Assembly (NCBI GenBank): GCA_964057225.1 | Contig: OZ059896.1 | Span: 7,564,001 to 7,628,000 of the forward strand | DNA from: Auanema rhodensis | Lineage: Eukaryota; Animalia; Nematoda | Length of the DNA stretch: 64,000 nt | Direction: 5' to 3' | Shown here: positions 8,705-17,000 of the stretch, piece by piece | Numbering within the stretch: the stretch's first letter is position 1 | Layout of the letters: each line of letters opens with the position of its first letter | Notes under the pieces: model-generated | Told to the model about the DNA's origin: nothing | The model's input: the letters and a program-made list of their open reading frames with translations, nothing else | Databases searched by the model: none | Program-made: the position numbers and the translations under genes

Positions 8705-9311
8705 ATGCCAACCAAGGCTCTTGGAGAGACACTTAGAGAATACACCGTCATCGGACGCAGACTCCCATCAGAGGCTGAGCCCGTGACTCCAGTATGGAAG
8801 ATGCAAATCTTCGCTTCCAACCACGTTATTGCCAAATCTCGTTTCTGGTATTTCGTCTCTATGCTTCGCAGAGTGAAGAAGGCTAATGGAGAAATCCTCT
8901 CTTGCCAAGAGGTAAATTATTATCTGTCTTTTCAGATATTTTAATTTATAATTTTTTTAAACTTTTTGTTTATAGGTTTTCGAGAGCAAGCCTGGATCCG
9001 TCAAGAACTACGGAGTCTGGCTTAAGTACGATTCTCGTACCGGACATCACAACATGTACCGTGAGTACCGTGATGTTACCGTTGCCGGAGCTGTCACCCA
9101 AGCTTACCGTGACATGGGAGCCCGTCATCGTGCCCAGGCTGACAGAATCCACATTCTTAAGGTCCAGACCATCAAGGCCAGCGAGACCAAGAGAGTTGGA
9201 GTCAAGATGTTCCACGATTCTAAGATCAGATTCCCACTCCCACACCGTGTCACCAAGAGAAGAAACGTTTCTCTCTTCACCACCGCTAAGCCAAGAACTC
9301 ACTTTGCTTAA
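8705..9311 (+). CDS. rpl-20: 60S ribosomal protein eL20 (L18a), 2 exons
   Basis: [13 protein letters not shown]...IAKSRFWYF and HNMYREYRD...RFPLPHR; intron ~8912-8976. Confidence 0.97.
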
Positions 9312-9547
9312 ACGTTGTTATTGTTGCACGGATAAATGTTTTGTTGTATTTTAATTTTTTTTTACATATTATTCTTAGCGTTTGTCGCTGTCTATATCGC
9401 GCTCCGTTGCGTTCTCTCATTGTCTGCGCTCTATCTCTCAGAATTAGACCAGACCGCCCGTCTTTAGCGGCGGTGGTTCTTCTCTAGTTTCTGCTTTTTA
9501 CTCCCTGATAATTATTTTCATTTCAATTTGTTCAGCCTTTCAACACA

Positions 9548-9932
9548 ATGGCCGCTATCCCAGAGGGTGATTACGAAAAAGGAAAGCAGATCTTCAAGCA
9601 GAGATGCCTCCAATGCCATGTTGTTGACTCTAAGGCTACCAAGACTGGGCCCACTCTTCACGGACTTATTGGACGTACCTCAGGAACTGTTGATGGATTC
9701 GACTACTCTGCTGCCAACAAGAGCAAGGTAATTGTTGTTCTATCTAACCGTTTCTTATATGTGAATTATTCAGGGAGTCGTCTGGAACAGAGAAACCCTC
9801 TTCGAATACCTTTTAAACCCCAAGAAGTACATCCCAGGAACCAAGATGGTCTTCGCTGGATTGAAGAAGGTCGACGAACGTGCTCACCTTATCAAGTACA
9901 TCGAGGTTGAATCCGCCAAGCCATGTGCTTAA
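9548..9932 (+). CDS. cyc-2.1: Cytochrome c, 2 exons
   Basis: CLQCH heme motif, [23 protein letters not shown]; short intron after NKSK; ends ESAKPCA*. Confidence 0.96.
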
Positions 9933-10050
9933 ATTTCATACCATCTCTCAACATTGTTGTAGGATTAAAGTTTAATTTAACGATTGTTCGATAGAATAGT
10001 TTTAATATATGTAGAGAAGGCGTAAGCCCAGAATAATACATTTTATACAT

Positions 10051-11382
10051 TTATAGTTTTGATTTCTTTGGGGATAGTAGTAATAACTGCTTTTTTCCAC
10101 CAGATAAAGTTTTCACTATTGCTTCATGGTAGTCATCAATGTTGACTGCATCTGCAGGAGGAGCGGAAATCTTTCCTGCTATAGCCAATTCCTGATATAA
10201 ATTATAATTTCTCGTTCCTAATTTCGTTCCGTACCTCTAGTTCAGCCATACACCTCTTGGTTTTCTGTTCGTTCTCAGGTAGTCTCATCCACCAGCCAAC
10301 CCGAATGCCCCTCACTTGAATATCATTAAATACCAAAGCTGAAGTAGAGAACTCGTGAGCTTTCTTTGACATGCCTCCTAAAAAGCGCTTTCATTATGAA
10401 TTACACAATGCACTATACCATAAACTATACACATTCCACCTGAAGCTAACGCTGACGAGATAGCAAGGGCACTTCGGCCACCCACTCCATTAAGAGCTAG
10501 TTTGGGTCTATTTTCAAGTTCTTTGATAAGCTTTAATCAAACTATAACTTCCTGATAAAAAATGAAAGTATTGACCTTTGTTCCAGATCTTGAAAATTCT
10601 TCTTCCGTGAAGACGTGATCGGCTCCCAGACGCCAAAGTTCAGTCTTTAAGCGGCCTACATTAGGACGATCACGAATAAGATTGATTGTTCTGATCCCCC
10701 ATGCTGAAATTTACTTTAGGAAAACATTTACTTATGTTTCCTTACCTTTACAAAGTTGAATAACATTACGTCCAACTCCCGAGTTAGATGCATTTTGAAT
10801 AACATAGTCACCAGAATTTAAGGAGACGTACTCGCGCAACATTATCCATGCAGTTGGAGGATTAATCATGAAAGTTGCAGCTGTTGCCTTAAAATTTTGC
10901 TTATGTGAGTAACCTAATGAATAGTTACCAAATCAACTTTTTTACTAATTCGAAACAAATCAGATTCTTCTGCAATATAATATTGACACCAGAACGGTGT
11001 GCTGGATGAAAATAACGTTACATGGTCACCTATCTCAAATTTTGATCCTTCCACCACCTAAATTCTTGAACAGTGTATTTATAATTTTTAACCAACTTTG
11101 ACAATCTCTCCAACTCCTTCTGATCCACCGATAGCAGGTAGTTCATCAGGAAAGGGGTATCTTCCTTGTATTCTGTTGATGTCCAACGGATTAATTGGAG
11201 AAGCTAACCATCTGATGAGAACTTCACCAGGCTTTAAATCAGTGGATATTTCTTGATAATCTATTTCCAACACCTAAAGAAAATCGATATTTATTTCATA
11301 TACTTATAAAAACAAATGTTAATGAAACCTTTCGCGGGTCCCCATACTTCCGAAATATGACAGCTTTGGAGTGAACAGACAT
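10051..11382 (-). CDS. MECR-family 2-enoyl thioester reductase paralog (MDR superfamily) ending in -SKL
   Basis: MSVHSKAVIFRKYGDP, ASPINPLDINRIQG, GGSEGVG, INPPTAW, IQNASNSGVG, ALNGVGG; ends KKQLLLLSPKKSKL*. Confidence 0.9.
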
Positions 11383-11769
11383 TGCTTAAAATGAGAACAA
11401 ATTATACACTAAATAAGCTAAATTATACTGATATAATTAAAGTAAAATTATGTTCCACTGCCACACATAGCGATTGCAATGGTAACAATTTACACAGACT
11501 ACAATGTAGTGAATCAAAGAAGACAATATGATAAACATGAACTAATATTATACCTAAGTTCTACATTCTAACTTATGATTTCTCAGTTTTCTTTCAGCAT
11601 TATATCATAATCAAACTTTGAGGGAGATAACTACTACGCACATGATTAACTCATCAAATCGTATTCCTTAATTTATCATATCAATGTTTTGTTGTTCTTT
11701 CTGTTGATCAACACAAAACATCAGCTGATATCGCTTGTTATTCATATTGTAGTGACATTTCGCTCTTGT

Positions 11770-11975
11770 AACAACTTCTTTTAATACAAACTACTCCACT
11801 TCTTTGATTAGTTTATTGCGATGAAATTCAAAGTTTTTGAATATTTTATGTTACTGTAGTCGATACTTATTTACATAATTCAAATTTTCTCTTGATCCAT
11901 CGACTATTATACAGCTCTCTTGCATTATTCCGGTATTCTTGCAGACTATTTCATGCGTTGTTCACAATTTTTTTT
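11770..11975 (-). mobile_element. Decayed LINE (RTE/CR1-like) RT fragment
   Basis: With frameshifts it reads NNA*NS..ARIPE*CKRA..NYVNKYR..HKIF..NKLIKEVE, resembling the LINE consensus N..W..G.IPEEWK.A...NYR...YKIF...NRL...VE. Confidence 0.4.
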
Positions 11976-13344
11976 ATTATTATCATTATCATGTCAATAT
12001 TGTTCTTTTGATTGATACATTGTTTTTTTTTCTAATCATCTTATTCCATGGAAAATTATATGCTCTTATAGTATTATTTTGTACTATTCTGAAATAAAAC
12101 TTGTTATATATTCAATTTAAAAGTTTCTTTCAAAATCACTCATATAATTATTCTATCTTAGGTCTAAGCTCTATTATTCAGCTATACATTGATAACTTTG
12201 AATTAGATTTGATTTTCTCTATTCATATAATAAGTTTGTTATTAACAAATGTTTTTAATAAATTCATGTAGGTAATCCATTACCCTTCTCTACATTGTTA
12301 CCAAATGATTCTGTCATCATAATCTGTTCCACAAGTTTATAAAGTTCTATAAATTGATTGAACGAAGTCGTTATTTGACCTTATAAGTCCATTTAATCAG
12401 GCAATCACAGAAGGGTTGCGATTTCGTGTATTTTTATTACCCAGCTTGTTCATTGAACAGCTCTATTAAATGATATGTAAGTTTCTTATCAAAATTTTGA
12501 ATGAAAACTACCCATGATAACTATTGCACTGATTTGGGATGTCGTTGAAGGAGTAATCTTATCAATAATTGTTGAAAAACGAAAACGATTTCGCTAATTA
12601 GAGTTAATTGAAAGTTCTACTGGATATCCTTTTTATTTGTAAGCATATCTCATTTATAATAGGGATATTACTTTACACTAAAATAATTTATATAACCGTT
12701 TTGGCATATTTTTTCGTATGATAATATATATTTTGATATGCATTCCAATGAGGTCGCTATAACTTTATGACCCTTTGTATTTATCATATTTCTTTGCCAC
12801 ATTTATTCATATAATCAAAAGAAATCATTATATTCATGTTGTAAAAGCTTGTCTTTATTTATGGATGTTATATATTGTTCCTCGTGGGTCTATTCTTTAT
12901 ATATCATCGGATGTTTCTTGAACTGTCCTCGCTGTGCGTCTTGTAATCATAAAATATAATCGAGGCGGAGGTCTAGGGCACCTCCCCCAAGAAAAGAACG
13001 CAGTTTCTTGGCCGAAAGATCTGTAAACCTCTTGATATGAACCTAATGGTATCTAATATAATCGTAACACATTGCCATCATTTATAAGTTTGTCTTCATT
13101 TGTTTTCCCTTTCCTTATAATTATTCTTAATGTTTTACATTGCGCAGCTCCAATCTAAATTAGTTGCTTAAATAAATTTTATTTAGAGTCGCTTGTTTCT
13201 ATTTGCTATGTTTTTAGGTTTAGGTTTTTCTAACTTATTTATTTATTGTTTTATCACTGTTTTAAAATGTATTTTATTTTAATATATTAATTTCTATTTA
13301 ATTTTTCAATCATATAAGCTATTTTTGCCACAAAAATTGCAGTT

Positions 13345-13510
13345 ATATGCGAGAATGACCTCGTCGCCGACTAATTCAATACCCCTCATGGTGCGCATCT
13401 CGTCGATGACGTCACGATTTTCGGCCATTGGCTCTGCGCCAACATCCCATGGCCTCGCGCCAGGCTACGCCCACCAGGCGATAACTTTGTCCGTTTTACG
13501 ACGTACGGTT
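13345..13510 (+). promoter_or_regulatory. CpG-rich promoter region upstream of FNIP
   Basis: GC island in an AT-rich background with CRE palindrome TGACGTCA at 13407-13414, about 400 nt above the first acceptors at 13916/13934. Confidence 0.55.
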
Positions 13511-14052
13511 TCATTTAAACTATTCATTTACAAAATAATTAATTGATTAGTTTTTTATCAATCATTCATCCTCTGTTTTCATGTTTAACTCATGATTATA
13601 CACGCCTGTTCATGACTATGGTGTTGATCTTATCATTTTGCTTATTATGTTGTGATAATAATTTTGGTAGATTTACGTTATTTAAAATATGCGTTTTTTG
13701 TAAAGTTTTATTCATTCTCTTTGATCTAATTTTTTTTATTCATTATTTCTTTTGCTTCAGTTTCATTCCCATATCACGAGTTGTTTTACGACTAGCTATT
13801 CCCACGTTTATGTTTCTTTATTTTATATTTAAATTTTTAGACTCTGTCGTTTAACTATAAAAAATTTACTCTTATTTCTTTTTATTGTTTTTAGTTTAAT
13901 TATTTTTGTTTTTTAGTTACCTCGCCATATTTAGGTGATGTGTGGAATCACGGGTAGATAGCTACCTGCGATTCTCGACATTTCTTGGTAAGTTGATTTT
14001 GAGTTTTAATTGTACTGTAATTTATTTCTTTTAAAGATTGGCTCTGCCGTAA

Positions 14053-17000
14053 ATGTTCCGATTGTGGCCAAAAAGACGCCGCACGGGCGAGGAAGAGTTT
14101 GTTGAGCCTGAACCACCAAGTAATAATAAATCGAAAACCCGAGGGCGTCCTGCTTCCTCTATATCCTTAATTGAGGAATTATGGTAAGTTTTTTGTAATA
14201 TCTATAATATATTTTGTCTTGTGCTCATTTATATATTTATGTGTTTTAGTATTTCGCGTGATTCCTTGCTAGCTGGCGACAGCATGCGCATGGTAATATT
14301 AGAATGTGAACCCAAAAGAGCTATATTTGATTCTTCTACTATTATTCCTATTGGAGATCGTTCCAGAGAAGGTCTGAAAATTTCATCGTGCAAAAAATTT
14401 GAGGTATGAATTTTATTCGTTATTTTATTATTATTTTGTTGTCAGCTTCTCCGAAAGCAGAAAGATCTTAATATGCTAGGACAGTTAATCTGGGGAGCAG
14501 TTCCAACCCCTCAGGGAGCTGATGCTCTCAAATTTCATCAACTGTAAGTTGATAGTTCACTTATATTATTAAAGTTTTACTGTTAAATATTTTAGTGACG
14601 ATGATAAGTTACTTTTAAGTAGAGTTTTTGGCCTCCCAAAAATAGCTAGCAAGTGAGTTACTTTAATTAAAATTGTTTTTTAAATGTATATATTGTAGGG
14701 ATAATCTTGGTATGAACGATTCTGTTGTGTCTTCTGATAATGAAGTGCAATACGTCAGTACTGTGCGGTCTTTGGATGGTGGACTACGAAGTTCATTATG
14801 TTCTACAGCACCTCCCGAACAATTTCAAAGAGTAAGAAGACATGTGTTACTATTCATATTTATTTAATATTCTTGAAGGTGCGCAATGCAAGTCTTCAAT
14901 TAGATAATGATGATCTAGAAGACATCCGACCGTTTTCACCTCCACATCGTTTATCACGCAATAGACGAATAATTATGTCTCAGAAGGCATCACTCTGTGA
15001 CTCGGGTAGCTTTTCGTGTTTATCAAAGCTCACATGAGTTTGTTCTTCTAGGCCAGTCAATCAATTCTAATAAGACTAGATCTCGATTGAGTTCATGTGG
15101 ATCACAACCGGAGGATGAAATTGTTCGTCAAGTTGCTATCGGTATTATTTTTGGTAACTCTCAGCGACATTTTCTTTTTCAAGTTAGTTACCTAATTAGT
15201 AATCTTTAATCATTTCTTTTTAATTTTAAGCATATTCCCATCGTTGAAACAGAAATGTCCAAGTTAGAGGCTAGAGTAATAAATGCAGCGATGCATACAC
15301 CTTCTTTTCTGTATAATGTACATAAGGTATTTAGTTTTGATTTTATTAACATAATATTAATTATTCAGGCTTGGGAAGAATTTTGCAACTGTATATGCTT
15401 TTTGTATAATTCTCCTCGACTGCGAAATCCTGTTTGGTTGAGCTTAGCCGAGAAGGACTTGAATGATTCTCTTGTCGCCTCTAAATTCTGTTCCCAATTA
15501 GCGAACTTAGTTCAGAAATTGGATACAAAACAGACTAAATTGTGGGTTCTAGCTGGTGTTAAAAGTTGAATCTCTATTTTTTTAGCTTCCTTTCAAACGT
15601 AATATCTTCCGTTCTCATGCATCACATGTCTTGGGTTGCTAGTGTTGCTTCTCCGCAAACTGCACCGTCAACACCTATTCATAGTAGAAATTTTTTAATA
15701 GGAACGGCAGAAAACCCCGAAGCTTCTTATTTTCCTTATAACCCTCATATGGCTCAGTATTTGGAGATTAGTGGAAGTGTTGGACATTCCAGTAGAAGCA
15801 CAAAAGTAAGTAGCAAGTTTTAGTGTTCAGAAAGTAATTAATTTGTCCTTGTAGACTGTTGTTTGTGGTGGAGACTGGGATCAACTCGCAGAGATTTTAC
15901 AAGTTCTTTCATATTTTATCCGCTGCTCTACTGTTCAACAAAGAGGTTAGTTTTTGTTTTTTCTTTATTATTTTGATTATGTAATCAATGTTGAGGGATT
16001 TAAGTGCTTAAGGCTTATTAAGTGTTTCGTTATTTGTTGAATTTTCCTCTAACAAGTGCAGGAAAGTTGCTTTTCCACTATTTACTGTTTGCTGTACACT
16101 TTTTAATTCGTTGCGTACTCACGTCAACTCTGCTTACCGGAAGTTCAACGAGAAAATATACTGAAAAGTCATATGAATTTCCTTATTCCAAACACCTAAC
16201 TGTTAGCATAGAATTTTAATCACGTGAGAACATAGGAATGTAGTAAATTGTTATGGTGATAGTCTCAAAGCACCTCTTTTTTTCTGTCCAGTTCTTTCAA
16301 ACGATCGAATGTTCTGTTTAACATCACAAAAAGATAAATTGAAGGGATACCACATGAAAATTGATAAAAAAAGGACCGTGGAGAGAAAATGAATGCCCAC
16401 CGGAAATAATCTATTTTGTTTGATTATGAACTTACATGGTGTTGGTATTGGCCCATAGTTGTAAAATTGAGATAGGTGGGCGGATATGTTTGCTTTCGGA
16501 AGTGAGGACAGCTGTAATATCGCCGATAATAGCTATTTTGTTGTTTTGAAAATAAAATGACGTGATGAAACTTTTAAAAAAAATTATTCATTCTTTTCAG
16601 AAACAACATTCAAAGAATCTGTACCACTTCCCATTTCACAGTCGTTTTCACCTGAAGCGTCATCTCCGGATCTTGTCGGATCCCCTCCTATCGGAAGTTT
16701 GAGAGAACTAGCTTTCAGTCCGGACAAACGTATGTTTACAGATTTATTTTATTGAATTATGAAAGTTTTTTCATTACACTAAAGAAGCAATCGAGAAAAA
16801 ATATATAGAAAACGTTGTTTGTGTTCGTCACAAATTGCGGGTTTTCTTCTATTAGTTAAATGCTATAGAAATTTTAGTTACGGAGACGGATGCAGCATCT
16901 TCATGTTCTCTGGATTCTCTACCTGCTGATTGTATCAGCTGTCCAGTCCTTTCAACTTTAGATAATTTGGGTCGATCACTTTTAGCTGGACCATCAGTTC

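What the first reader, a model, noticed from the sequence alone, without database searches (positions are those of the whole stretch)
10051..11382. MECR paralog with a peroxisomal PTS1 (-SKL) and no obvious mitochondrial presequence
Seen: the last exon reads GGKKQLLLLSPKKSKL*, and the start Met (just after a ttttaag acceptor) leads almost directly into the catalytic fold. Known: MECR/Etr1 enzymes are normally mitochondrial FAS-II reductases, and SKL preceded by basic residues is the canonical PEX5-bound signal. Inference: this may be a re-targeted peroxisomal 2-enoyl-CoA reductase. In nematodes it could act on peroxisomal acyl-CoA intermediates such as unsaturated ascaroside side chains.
Basis: partly seen in the sequence, partly recalled or inferred. 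Interest (0 to 1): 0.75.

Follow-up and report, generated by a model that had tools for sequence, protein, structure and literature searches.

The report
Peroxisome-targeted copy of mitochondrial enoyl reductase
This worm gene is a duplicated copy of the mitochondrial fatty-acid enzyme MECR that has lost its mitochondrial address and gained a peroxisomal one. The change is shared by many nematodes, including the C. elegans gene Y48A6B.9, which databases still label mitochondrial.

Summary
An 8-exon minus-strand gene (10051-11382) encodes a 341-aa MECR/Etr1-type reductase ending in KKSKL.

- **Transcript:** all seven introns appear in spliced contigs of four public runs from one study. The contigs stop 4-8 nt upstream of the ATG, and nothing is covered for the next 2.4 kb. 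An in-frame TAA lies two codons upstream, so no presequence exon is seen.
- **Family:** the protein is the ortholog of C. elegans Y48A6B.9 (Q9XXC8). It sits in a nematode-only clade (support 100/100) that is sister to chromadorean mecr-1.
- **Targeting signals:** in that clade the leader before strand 1 has a median of 7 aa, against 23-36 aa elsewhere. The C-terminus matches the PTS1 consensus in 36 of 42 sequences, against 0 of 45 elsewhere.
- **Active site:** the catalytic Tyr is kept, but the otherwise invariant Trp311 is lost (Arg here, Ala in most clade members).
[quoted passage not shown] C. elegans, Auanema and Diploscapter have one at the same position; four mecr-1 loci have none.

Most likely this is a PEX5-imported, NADPH-dependent enoyl-CoA reductase of the fasting-induced peroxisomal beta-oxidation regulon. 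Localisation, substrate and any ascaroside role are inferred, not shown. I found no paper that describes this retargeting.

The parts
10051..11382 (-). Whole coding span of the MECR-paralog gene (8 exons, 341 aa), ortholog of C. elegans Y48A6B.9
   Evidence: Gene model. All junctions confirmed by spliced contigs. Orthology from the trees.
11329..11382 (-). Exon 1 (start ATG at 11382-11380; 18 aa, MSVHSKAVIFRKYGDPRK)
   Evidence: Junction 11329|11273 confirmed. In-frame TAA two codons upstream.
11097..11273 (-). Exon 2 (59 aa; GroES-like domain; holds the catalytic Tyr57 codon at 11159-11157, equivalent to human Tyr94)
   Evidence: Pfam ADH_N hit, E = 5.4e-07. Tyr conserved in all aligned rows but one gapped clade-A row. 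Junctions.
10929..11057 (-). Exon 3 (43 aa)
10746..10887 (-). Exon 4 (holds the NADPH-binding segment VIQNASNSGVGR)
   Evidence: The Q, N, S and G/V positions of this segment are invariant or nearly invariant columns in A2.
10576..10703 (-). Exon 5
10419..10530 (-). Exon 6
10235..10377 (-). Exon 7 (holds Arg273, codon 10303-10301, at the position of the otherwise invariant human Trp311)
   Evidence: Column counts.
10051..10191 (-). Exon 8 (last strand KQLLLL, 7-residue tail SPKKSKL, stop TAA at 10053-10051)
10054..10062 (-). Codons for the C-terminal tripeptide Ser-Lys-Leu (canonical PTS1), preceded by Lys-Lys
   Evidence: Direct reading. PTS1-type endings in 36 of 42 orthologs. The tail is flexible in the AF2 model of the Auanema ortholog.
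11385..11391 (-). ttttaag acceptor-like site two bases before the ATG; assembled transcripts end here (possible trans-splice site, not shown)
   Evidence: Contig ends at 11386 and 11390.
11497..11511 (.). [quoted passage not shown]
   Evidence: It is the only match in the 64 kb window, with 0.05 expected. An element at the same position occurs in C. elegans (perfect), Auanema (1 mismatch) and Diploscapter (2 mismatches). The element is defined in PMC12856210.

Best explanation
The gene encodes a peroxisomal matrix enzyme that arose by duplication of the nematode mitochondrial enoyl-thioester reductase gene mecr-1.

- **Shown by sequence:** after the duplication this copy lost the N-terminal mitochondrial presequence. 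It gained a short flexible C-terminal tail ending in a PTS1 tripeptide, here Lys-Lys-Ser-Lys-Leu.
- **Inferred:** the tail would be bound by the PTS1 receptor PEX5 (prx-5) and the folded protein imported into peroxisomes.
- **Shown by sequence:** it keeps the MECR fold, the NADPH-binding segment and the catalytic Tyr.
- **Inferred:** it most likely uses NADPH to reduce the C2=C3 double bond of trans-2-enoyl-CoA thioesters, which are the products of peroxisomal acyl-CoA oxidases. It would act on CoA esters rather than ACP esters.
- **Shown by sequence:** several residues that are invariant in all mitochondrial MECRs are changed (Gly136, Arg173, Asp177, Ile301, Trp311 in human numbering). The substrate range is therefore probably altered.
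- **Regulation:** an inverted GACTAC repeat about 120 bp upstream is shown. That transcription runs through the NHR-79/NHR-49 fasting and peroxisomal beta-oxidation regulon is inferred here and was shown experimentally only for the C. elegans ortholog.
For: - **Gene model and RNA:** seven introns are confirmed, contigs stop 4-8 nt before the ATG, and there is no coverage for 2.4 kb upstream. An in-frame stop lies two codons upstream.
- **Family:** the Auanema ortholog (70% identical) hits human MECR structures at E about 1e-63. Its AF2 model has pLDDT 93.5, and Foldseek gives TM 0.91-0.92 to 1ZSY, 2VCY and 7AYB. It carries Pfam ADH_N and ADH_zinc_N.
- **Paralog clade:** support is 100/100 on core columns. 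The clade is sister to chromadorean mecr-1, with Trichinella, Trichuris and Soboliphyme outside.
- **Targeting signals:** the leader median is 7 aa, against 23 (mecr-1) and 36 (other animals). PTS1-type endings occur in 36 of 42 against 0 of 33 and 0 of 12. The linkers are variable.
- **Structure of the ends:** strand 1 starts at residue 2, and the last 5 residues have pLDDT 59.
- **Catalytic Tyr:** kept.
- **Regulon:** a single IR3 lies in the window upstream of this gene. It is conserved in position in C. elegans, Auanema and Diploscapter and absent upstream of four mecr-1 loci. C. elegans Y48A6B.9 behaves as an NHR-79/NHR-49 target, induced in dhs-28 mutants together with prx-13, lonp-2 and B0395.3 (PMC12856210). 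It is induced 2.7-3.9 fold by dietary restriction (PMC3502458).
- **Earlier prediction:** Gurvitz 2009 found weak mitochondrial prediction for Y48A6B.9 (TargetP 0.207; PSORT II cytoplasmic) (PMC2774161).
- **Substrate class:** MECR accepts CoA as well as ACP thioesters in vitro (PMC9899272).
Against: - No localisation or enzyme data exist for this protein or, as far as I could find, for any ortholog.
- The RNA evidence consists of assembled contigs from one study. Contigs drop rare isoforms and cannot define true 5' ends.
- Some orthologs carry weak or non-consensus endings: SHI in C. elegans; NKL, TKL, HHL, ASL; the ascarid members end in TAL and MNK.
- The active-site Trp311 is replaced (Arg here, Ala in 36 of 42), so straight-chain 2-enoyl-CoA reduction is not assured.
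- The IR3 was not found within 1.5 kb upstream in Pristionchus, Steinernema or Bursaphelenchus.
- I could not check whether this genome also keeps a mecr-1 gene. Its nearest relative in the database, Auanema, does.
Confidence: 0.72

Rival explanations
1. The enzyme is peroxisomal as above, but its chemistry has shifted away from straight-chain trans-2-enoyl-CoA. Candidate substrates are 2-methyl-branched enoyl-CoAs, 2,4-dienoyl-CoAs or other alpha,beta-unsaturated carbonyls. The cause would be the remodelled active site and substrate entrance.
For: Five positions are invariant in 45 of 45 mitochondrial-type MECRs and changed in this clade, including Trp311 to Ala, Ser, Arg or Asn, and Arg173 to Ile, Val, Leu or Met. 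PDB entry 4W99 is a Y79F,W322E double mutant of Etr1p. By the shared GFW motif, Trp322 appears to correspond to human Trp311 (the equivalence is my inference). The stem branch of the clade is long, 0.56.
Against: The catalytic Tyr, the NADPH segment and the overall fold are retained. No structural or kinetic data show what the substitutions do.
Confidence: 0.25
2. The enzyme is cytosolic. The presequence was lost, but the C-terminal tripeptide is not a working import signal, or works only weakly, so the protein acts on cytosolic enoyl thioesters.
For: PSORT II called the C. elegans ortholog cytoplasmic. C. elegans ends in the weak variant SHI, and ascarid members lack a PTS1.
Against: 36 of 42 orthologs keep a consensus PTS1 while the preceding linker changes freely in length and sequence. 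This is hard to explain without selection on import. The window protein has the strongest form, KKSKL. The promoter element ties the gene to the peroxisomal regulon.
Confidence: 0.1
3. The enzyme is still mitochondrial, or dual-targeted. Entry would be through an unseen alternative first exon or an internal or cryptic signal, as current database names imply.
For: Database names say 'mitochondrial'. MitoProt gave 0.65 for Y48A6B.9. Contigs can miss rare isoforms.
Against: There is no upstream exon in contigs of four runs and no coverage for 2.4 kb upstream. An in-frame stop lies two codons before the ATG. Strand 1 begins at residue 2 in the model. The leaderless N-terminus is shared by the whole clade, whereas every mecr-1 has a 15-29 aa basic leader.
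Confidence: 0.05
4. One reading: the enzyme reduces alpha,beta-unsaturated ascaroside side-chain CoA esters in peroxisomes. It would thereby shape the ratio of saturated to unsaturated pheromones.
For: The reading is indirect only. The gene would share a compartment and a regulon with the ascaroside beta-oxidation enzymes acox, maoc-1, dhs-28 and daf-22. The clade is nematode-specific.
Against: No data link the gene to ascarosides. The only paper found that holds both 'ascaroside' and 'enoyl-CoA reductase' concerns mecr-1, and its edited alleles had no effect. Saturated ascarosides can arise without a reductase (my own knowledge of the pathway).
Confidence: 0.12

Closest known systems
MECR / Etr1p mitochondrial 2-enoyl thioester reductase (C. 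elegans MECR-1 = W09H1.5; human MECR, PDB 1ZSY, 2VCY, 7AYB)
   Same: It has the same MDR fold (TM 0.91-0.92 for the ortholog model) and about 38-40% identity. It keeps the catalytic Tyr94 equivalent and the NADPH-binding segment. In the tree it lies within the nematode MECRs.
   Different: It has no mitochondrial presequence and carries a C-terminal PTS1 tail. The invariant Trp311, Arg173, Asp177, Gly136 and Ile301 are replaced. Its promoter carries the peroxisomal-regulon IR3, which four mecr-1 loci lack. There is no known ACP in peroxisomes, so CoA esters are the presumed substrates.
C. elegans Y48A6B.9 (UniProt Q9XXC8, annotated 'Enoyl-[acyl-carrier-protein] reductase, mitochondrial')
   Same: It is the direct ortholog: about 56% identity, the same clade, the same leaderless N-terminus and C-terminal extension, and the same IR3 about 100 bp upstream of the ATG.
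   Different: C. elegans ends in the weak variant SHI, whereas the window protein ends in the canonical KKSKL. Papers and databases call the C. elegans protein mitochondrial or cytoplasmic.
PECR, mammalian peroxisomal trans-2-enoyl-CoA reductase
   Same: The proposed job and compartment are the same: NADPH-dependent enoyl-CoA reduction in peroxisomes, with a PTS1. The comparison with PECR, including its PPAR-type regulation, rests on my own knowledge and was not tested here.
   Different: PECR belongs to the short-chain dehydrogenase (SDR) family, which is unrelated. The window protein is a medium-chain (MDR) reductase, so this would be a functional analogue and not a relative.

Membership tests
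MECR/Etr1 enoyl-thioester reductases (MDR superfamily) | MDR two-domain fold (GroES-like domain plus Rossmann domain) | tested here: met
   Pfam ADH_N on window exon 2, and ADH_N plus ADH_zinc_N on the 70%-identical ortholog. AF2 model with Foldseek TM 0.91-0.92 to human MECR.
MECR/Etr1 enoyl-thioester reductases (MDR superfamily) | Catalytic tyrosine (human Tyr94 / Etr1p Tyr79) | tested here: met
   Window Tyr57. The column is Tyr in 41 of 42 clade members, 33 of 33 mecr-1 and 12 of 12 outgroup sequences.
MECR/Etr1 enoyl-thioester reductases (MDR superfamily) | Active-site tryptophan (human Trp311; apparently Etr1p Trp322) | tested here: not met
   Window Arg273. The clade has Ala 36, Ser 4, Arg 1 and Asn 1, against Trp in 45 of 45 others.
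MECR/Etr1 enoyl-thioester reductases (MDR superfamily) | Phylogenetic placement inside the family | tested here: met
   It is nested within nematode MECRs, and its own clade has 100/100 support.
MECR/Etr1 enoyl-thioester reductases (MDR superfamily) | N-terminal mitochondrial presequence | tested here: not met
   There are 6 residues before strand 1. The clade median is 7, against 23 and 36. No upstream exon appears in RNA contigs.
MECR/Etr1 enoyl-thioester reductases (MDR superfamily) | NADPH-dependent 2-enoyl thioester reductase activity | not testable with these tools
   Needs an enzyme assay.
PTS1-targeted peroxisomal matrix proteins | C-terminal tripeptide of the type [SAC][KRH][LM(I)] | tested here: met
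   SKL at the extreme C-terminus, followed by TAA. The last exon is confirmed by RNA contigs.
PTS1-targeted peroxisomal matrix proteins | Favourable, accessible upstream context (basic residues, flexible linker) | tested here: met
   Lys-Lys at -4 and -5, Pro at -6. The tail extends 7 residues beyond the last strand. The ortholog's tail has pLDDT 59 against 93.5 overall. No dedicated PTS1 predictor was available.
PTS1-targeted peroxisomal matrix proteins | Signal conserved among orthologs and absent from non-peroxisomal paralogs | tested here: met
   36 of 42 against 0 of 45. Exceptions are listed.
PTS1-targeted peroxisomal matrix proteins | PEX5-dependent import into peroxisomes | not testable with these tools
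   Needs imaging or fractionation.
NHR-79/NHR-49 regulon (79/49RE, IR3 of GACTAC; PMC12856210) | IR3 with at most 2 mismatches within 400 bp upstream of the start codon | tested here: met
   GACTACAATGTAGTG at 11497-11511 is the only match in 64 kb, with 0.05 expected at up to 1 mismatch. Its position is conserved in three other species.
NHR-79/NHR-49 regulon (79/49RE, IR3 of GACTAC; PMC12856210) | Induction on fasting or on a peroxisomal beta-oxidation defect, dependent on nhr-79 and nhr-49 | not testable with these tools
   Reported for the C. elegans ortholog only.
PECR (SDR-type peroxisomal enoyl-CoA reductase) | Short-chain dehydrogenase fold | tested here: not met
   The fold is MDR. The resemblance is functional only.

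The most novel reading that the evidence does not exclude
Nematodes run an NADPH-dependent reductive step inside peroxisomes, using a retargeted and active-site-remodelled MECR copy that fasting and NHR-49/NHR-79 switch on. This enzyme would decide the fate of enoyl-CoA intermediates. That could include the balance of saturated against alpha,beta-unsaturated ascaroside pheromones, or the handling of branched or unusual acyl chains. Some parasitic lineages would have lost the enzyme or its signal.
Probability: 0.15. Interest if true: 0.8.

Novelty: new variant of a known kind. Interest (0 to 1): 0.6.

Why it matters
The C. elegans ortholog is annotated as mitochondrial, and papers from 2012 and 2026 discuss it as mitochondrial (a 2009 study found its mitochondrial prediction weak). 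One of these papers found it co-regulated with peroxisomal genes and treated it as the odd one out. Reading it as a peroxisomal enzyme removes that oddity. It also adds an unrecognised reductive activity to nematode peroxisomal lipid and pheromone metabolism. Finally, it gives a clean example of organelle retargeting after gene duplication: presequence lost, PTS1 gained, active site and promoter changed. The idea can be tested directly in C. elegans with existing tools.

Tried and rejected
- **Spliced protein as a query:** the spliced protein has no reference, so it could not be handed to the search tools. I searched with exon 2 alone, then with an alignment of nematode hits plus the separate exons. 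The window's own protein is not in either library.
- **Acyl-pocket position Gly165:** I considered it as a sign of chain-length change. The column varies across animals (Ser, Lys, Gly...), so I draw no inference for this clade.
- **Equating Etr1p Trp322 with human Trp311:** the HMMER alignment of the ortholog to Etr2p shifts this segment by a 4-residue gap. The equivalence rests on the shared GFW motif and is marked as inference.
- **Bacterial-type promoter and terminator scan:** irrelevant to a nematode gene.
- **Literature searches:** MECR plus peroxisomal targeting signal plus nematode, 'mecr-2', and PTS1 plus enoyl-CoA reductase plus elegans found no description of this retargeting. One search on Etr1p residues returned only unrelated papers.
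- **Trans-splicing at ttttaag:** contigs end exactly where SL1 (from memory...TTTGAG) and the genome (...TTTAAG) would start to differ. No leader letters were seen, so this stays a conjecture.
- **Earlier scan notes:** the notes returned did not bear on this gene.

Full report
**Observation.** The minus strand of 10051-11382 carries an 8-exon gene. All introns are GT..AG and 39-55 nt long. The CDS is 1026 nt and the product 341 aa. The last exon ends ...GGKKQLLLLSPKKSKL followed by TAA. The ATG at 11382 lies two bases after ttttaag.

**RNA evidence.** Spliced contigs from four public runs (one study, same coded organism) were laid on 9300-15200.
- They contain all seven junctions of the model and run through the last exon into the 3' region.
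- They end at 11386 (three runs) or 11390 (one run), which is 4-8 nt upstream of the ATG.
- 11467-13830 has no coverage. The next expressed gene starts near 13990 on the other strand.
- An in-frame TAA lies two codons before the ATG.
- So neither an upstream presequence exon nor an alternative last exon is seen. The caveat is that contigs can miss rare isoforms and do not define true ends.

**What the protein is.** The window's protein is not in the searched libraries. Its closest relative is Auanema sp. JU1783 protein P0155, at 70-72% identity. The Auanema locus has the same gene order as the window: this gene, a convergent cytochrome c gene, then ribosomal protein L18A.
- P0155 matches human MECR crystal structures at E about 1e-63 and Candida Etr1p at about 1e-35.
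- It carries ADH_N and ADH_zinc_N.
- Its AlphaFold model (pLDDT 93.5) superposes on 1ZSY, 2VCY and 7AYB with TM 0.91-0.92.
- The catalytic Tyr (human Tyr94) is window Tyr57 and is conserved throughout.
- The NADPH segment VIQNASNSGVGR is intact; several of its positions are invariant or nearly invariant columns in A2.

**A separate paralog clade.** Two database searches recovered two nematode groups. I built a maximum-likelihood tree of 87 sequences, restricted to core columns so that the N-leader and C-tail could not influence it.
- The window protein falls in a clade of 42 sequences with 100/100 support and a long stem of 0.56.
- That clade is sister to all chromadorean mecr-1 sequences. Trichinella, Trichuris and Soboliphyme branch outside.
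- The clade contains C. elegans Q9XXC8. I take this to be Y48A6B.9 from memory of the accession; it lies on a 13.78 Mb chromosome.
- It also contains Diploscapter, Mesorhabditis, Pristionchus, Steinernema, panagrolaimids, cephalobids, aphelenchids and Ditylenchus.
- A later search added ascarid members and a Heterorhabditis fragment.
- Auanema and Diploscapter, among others, have both paralogs.

**Targeting signals.**
- Before strand 1 the clade has a median of 7 residues (the window has 6). mecr-1 sequences have 23 and other animals 36. The few longer clade members have an internal Met at the usual start position, which points to gene-model artefacts.
- After the conserved Lys-Gln of the last strand the clade has a median of 12 residues, against 5-6 elsewhere.
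- 36 of 42 end in [SAC][KRH][LMI]: SKL 15, SHL 7, SKI 6, AKL 3, SRL 2, SHI 2, AKI 1. The count is 0 of 33 for mecr-1 and 0 of 12 for outgroups.
- The linker before the tripeptide varies freely in length and sequence, so it is the signal that is conserved and not the tail sequence.
- In the model, strand 1 begins at residue 2 and the last five residues have pLDDT 59. This is consistent with an exposed tail.
- The window's KKSKL is the strongest form of the signal.
- Exceptions are NKL, TKL, HHL and ASL; one probable mis-model (ANA); extra Bursaphelenchus copies ending SQI and CQL; and the ascarid members ending TAL and MNK.

**Active-site changes.** Five positions are identical in all 45 mitochondrial-type sequences and differ in this clade. 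In human numbering they are:
- Gly136;
- Arg173, replaced by Ile, Val, Leu or Met;
- Asp177;
- Ile301, replaced by Val;
- Trp311, replaced by Ala in 36, Ser in 4, Arg in the window and Asn in Auanema.

Numbering was transferred through the 7AYB alignment. It checks against the G165Q difference between 7AYB and 7AYC and against Tyr94. PDB entry 4W99 is a Y79F,W322E double mutant of Etr1p. By the shared GFW motif, Trp322 seems to be the same position as Trp311 (inference). The enzyme therefore probably keeps hydride transfer and protonation by Tyr, but with a remodelled substrate site. MECR accepts CoA thioesters in vitro (PMC9899272), so ACP is not required.

[quoted passage not shown] It drives peroxisome proliferation and peroxisomal beta-oxidation genes on fasting. 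The paper lists Y48A6B.9 among IR3-bearing genes and confirms by qPCR that it is induced in dhs-28 mutants in an nhr-79- and nhr-49-dependent way. It nevertheless calls the gene 'a mitochondrial beta-oxidation enzyme' (PMC12856210).
- In the window, the only IR3 match at up to 2 mismatches is GACTACAATGTAGTG at 11497-11511, 115-129 bp upstream of this gene's ATG. The expected count is 0.05 per 64 kb at up to 1 mismatch.
- The orthologous loci have an IR3 at 93-107 bp upstream of the ATG in C. elegans (perfect), about 99 bp in Auanema (1 mismatch) and about 98 bp in Diploscapter (2 mismatches).
- None was found within 1.5 kb upstream in Pristionchus, Steinernema or Bursaphelenchus.
- None was found upstream of four mecr-1 loci.
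- Y48A6B.9 is also induced 2.7-3.9 fold by dietary restriction (PMC3502458).

**Literature.** Gurvitz 2009 noted that Y48A6B.9 is poorly predicted as mitochondrial (TargetP 0.207; PSORT II cytoplasmic) and set it aside (PMC2774161). None of the five papers that name the gene mentions a PTS1 or peroxisomes for it. Further searches found no description of a peroxisomal MECR paralog. The search covers open full texts only.

**Conclusion.** The core interpretation, a MECR paralog retargeted to peroxisomes, is well supported by five independent lines: transcript structure, orthology, signal conservation, structural accessibility and a peroxisomal-regulon promoter element. Import, substrate and physiological role are inferred. 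The ascaroside idea remains an untested hypothesis. I rate this a new variant of a known kind and of moderate to good interest. It corrects a standing annotation in C. elegans and points to an unrecognised peroxisomal reductive step in nematodes.

Noticed in passing
alignment column of human Gly165 (window Met127): Nematode mecr-1 proteins carry Gln at this position in 27 of 33 sequences. This is the same residue as the engineered human G165Q variant, which shortens the acyl tunnel. The window's clade has Met in 28 of 42. The result is alignment-based only.
   Followed up: partly
window 9548-9932 (+) and about 8900-9350: A two-exon cytochrome c gene (9548-9727, 9774-9932) converges on the reductase gene. 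Contigs bridge the two 3' ends. A ribosomal protein L18A-like ORF lies just before it. Auanema sp. JU1783 has the same three-gene order (L001).
   Followed up: partly
proteins P0348 (Aphelenchus avenae) and P0341 (Ditylenchus destructor): This is a second, separate pair of leaderless MECR copies. They keep the GFW tryptophan and fall outside the window's clade. P0348 ends in SKL, which may be an independent retargeting.
   Followed up: partly
protein searches: No member of the PTS1-bearing clade was returned from strongylids, filarial worms, Strongyloides and its relatives, or cyst nematodes. All of these yielded mecr-1. The ascarid members (Toxocara, Parascaris) lack a PTS1. This may reflect loss in animal parasites, or gaps in annotation.
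   Followed up: partly
window about 13986-15200 (+): A spliced, expressed gene with at least seven short GT..AG introns starts about 2.6 kb from the reductase ATG on the other strand. Its identity was not examined.
   Followed up: no
run X5: A gut metatranscriptome holds 6% of the sampled words of 9500-11400. This is probably a conserved part of a relative's cytochrome c.
   Followed up: no
L002 and L003 (C. elegans): A Logan transcript contig of Y48A6B.9 is colinear with the genome for 101 nt upstream of the ATG and starts inside the IR3. It shows no spliced leader and no upstream in-frame ATG. A 95-aa isoform b (P0376) shares the SHI end.
   Followed up: partly
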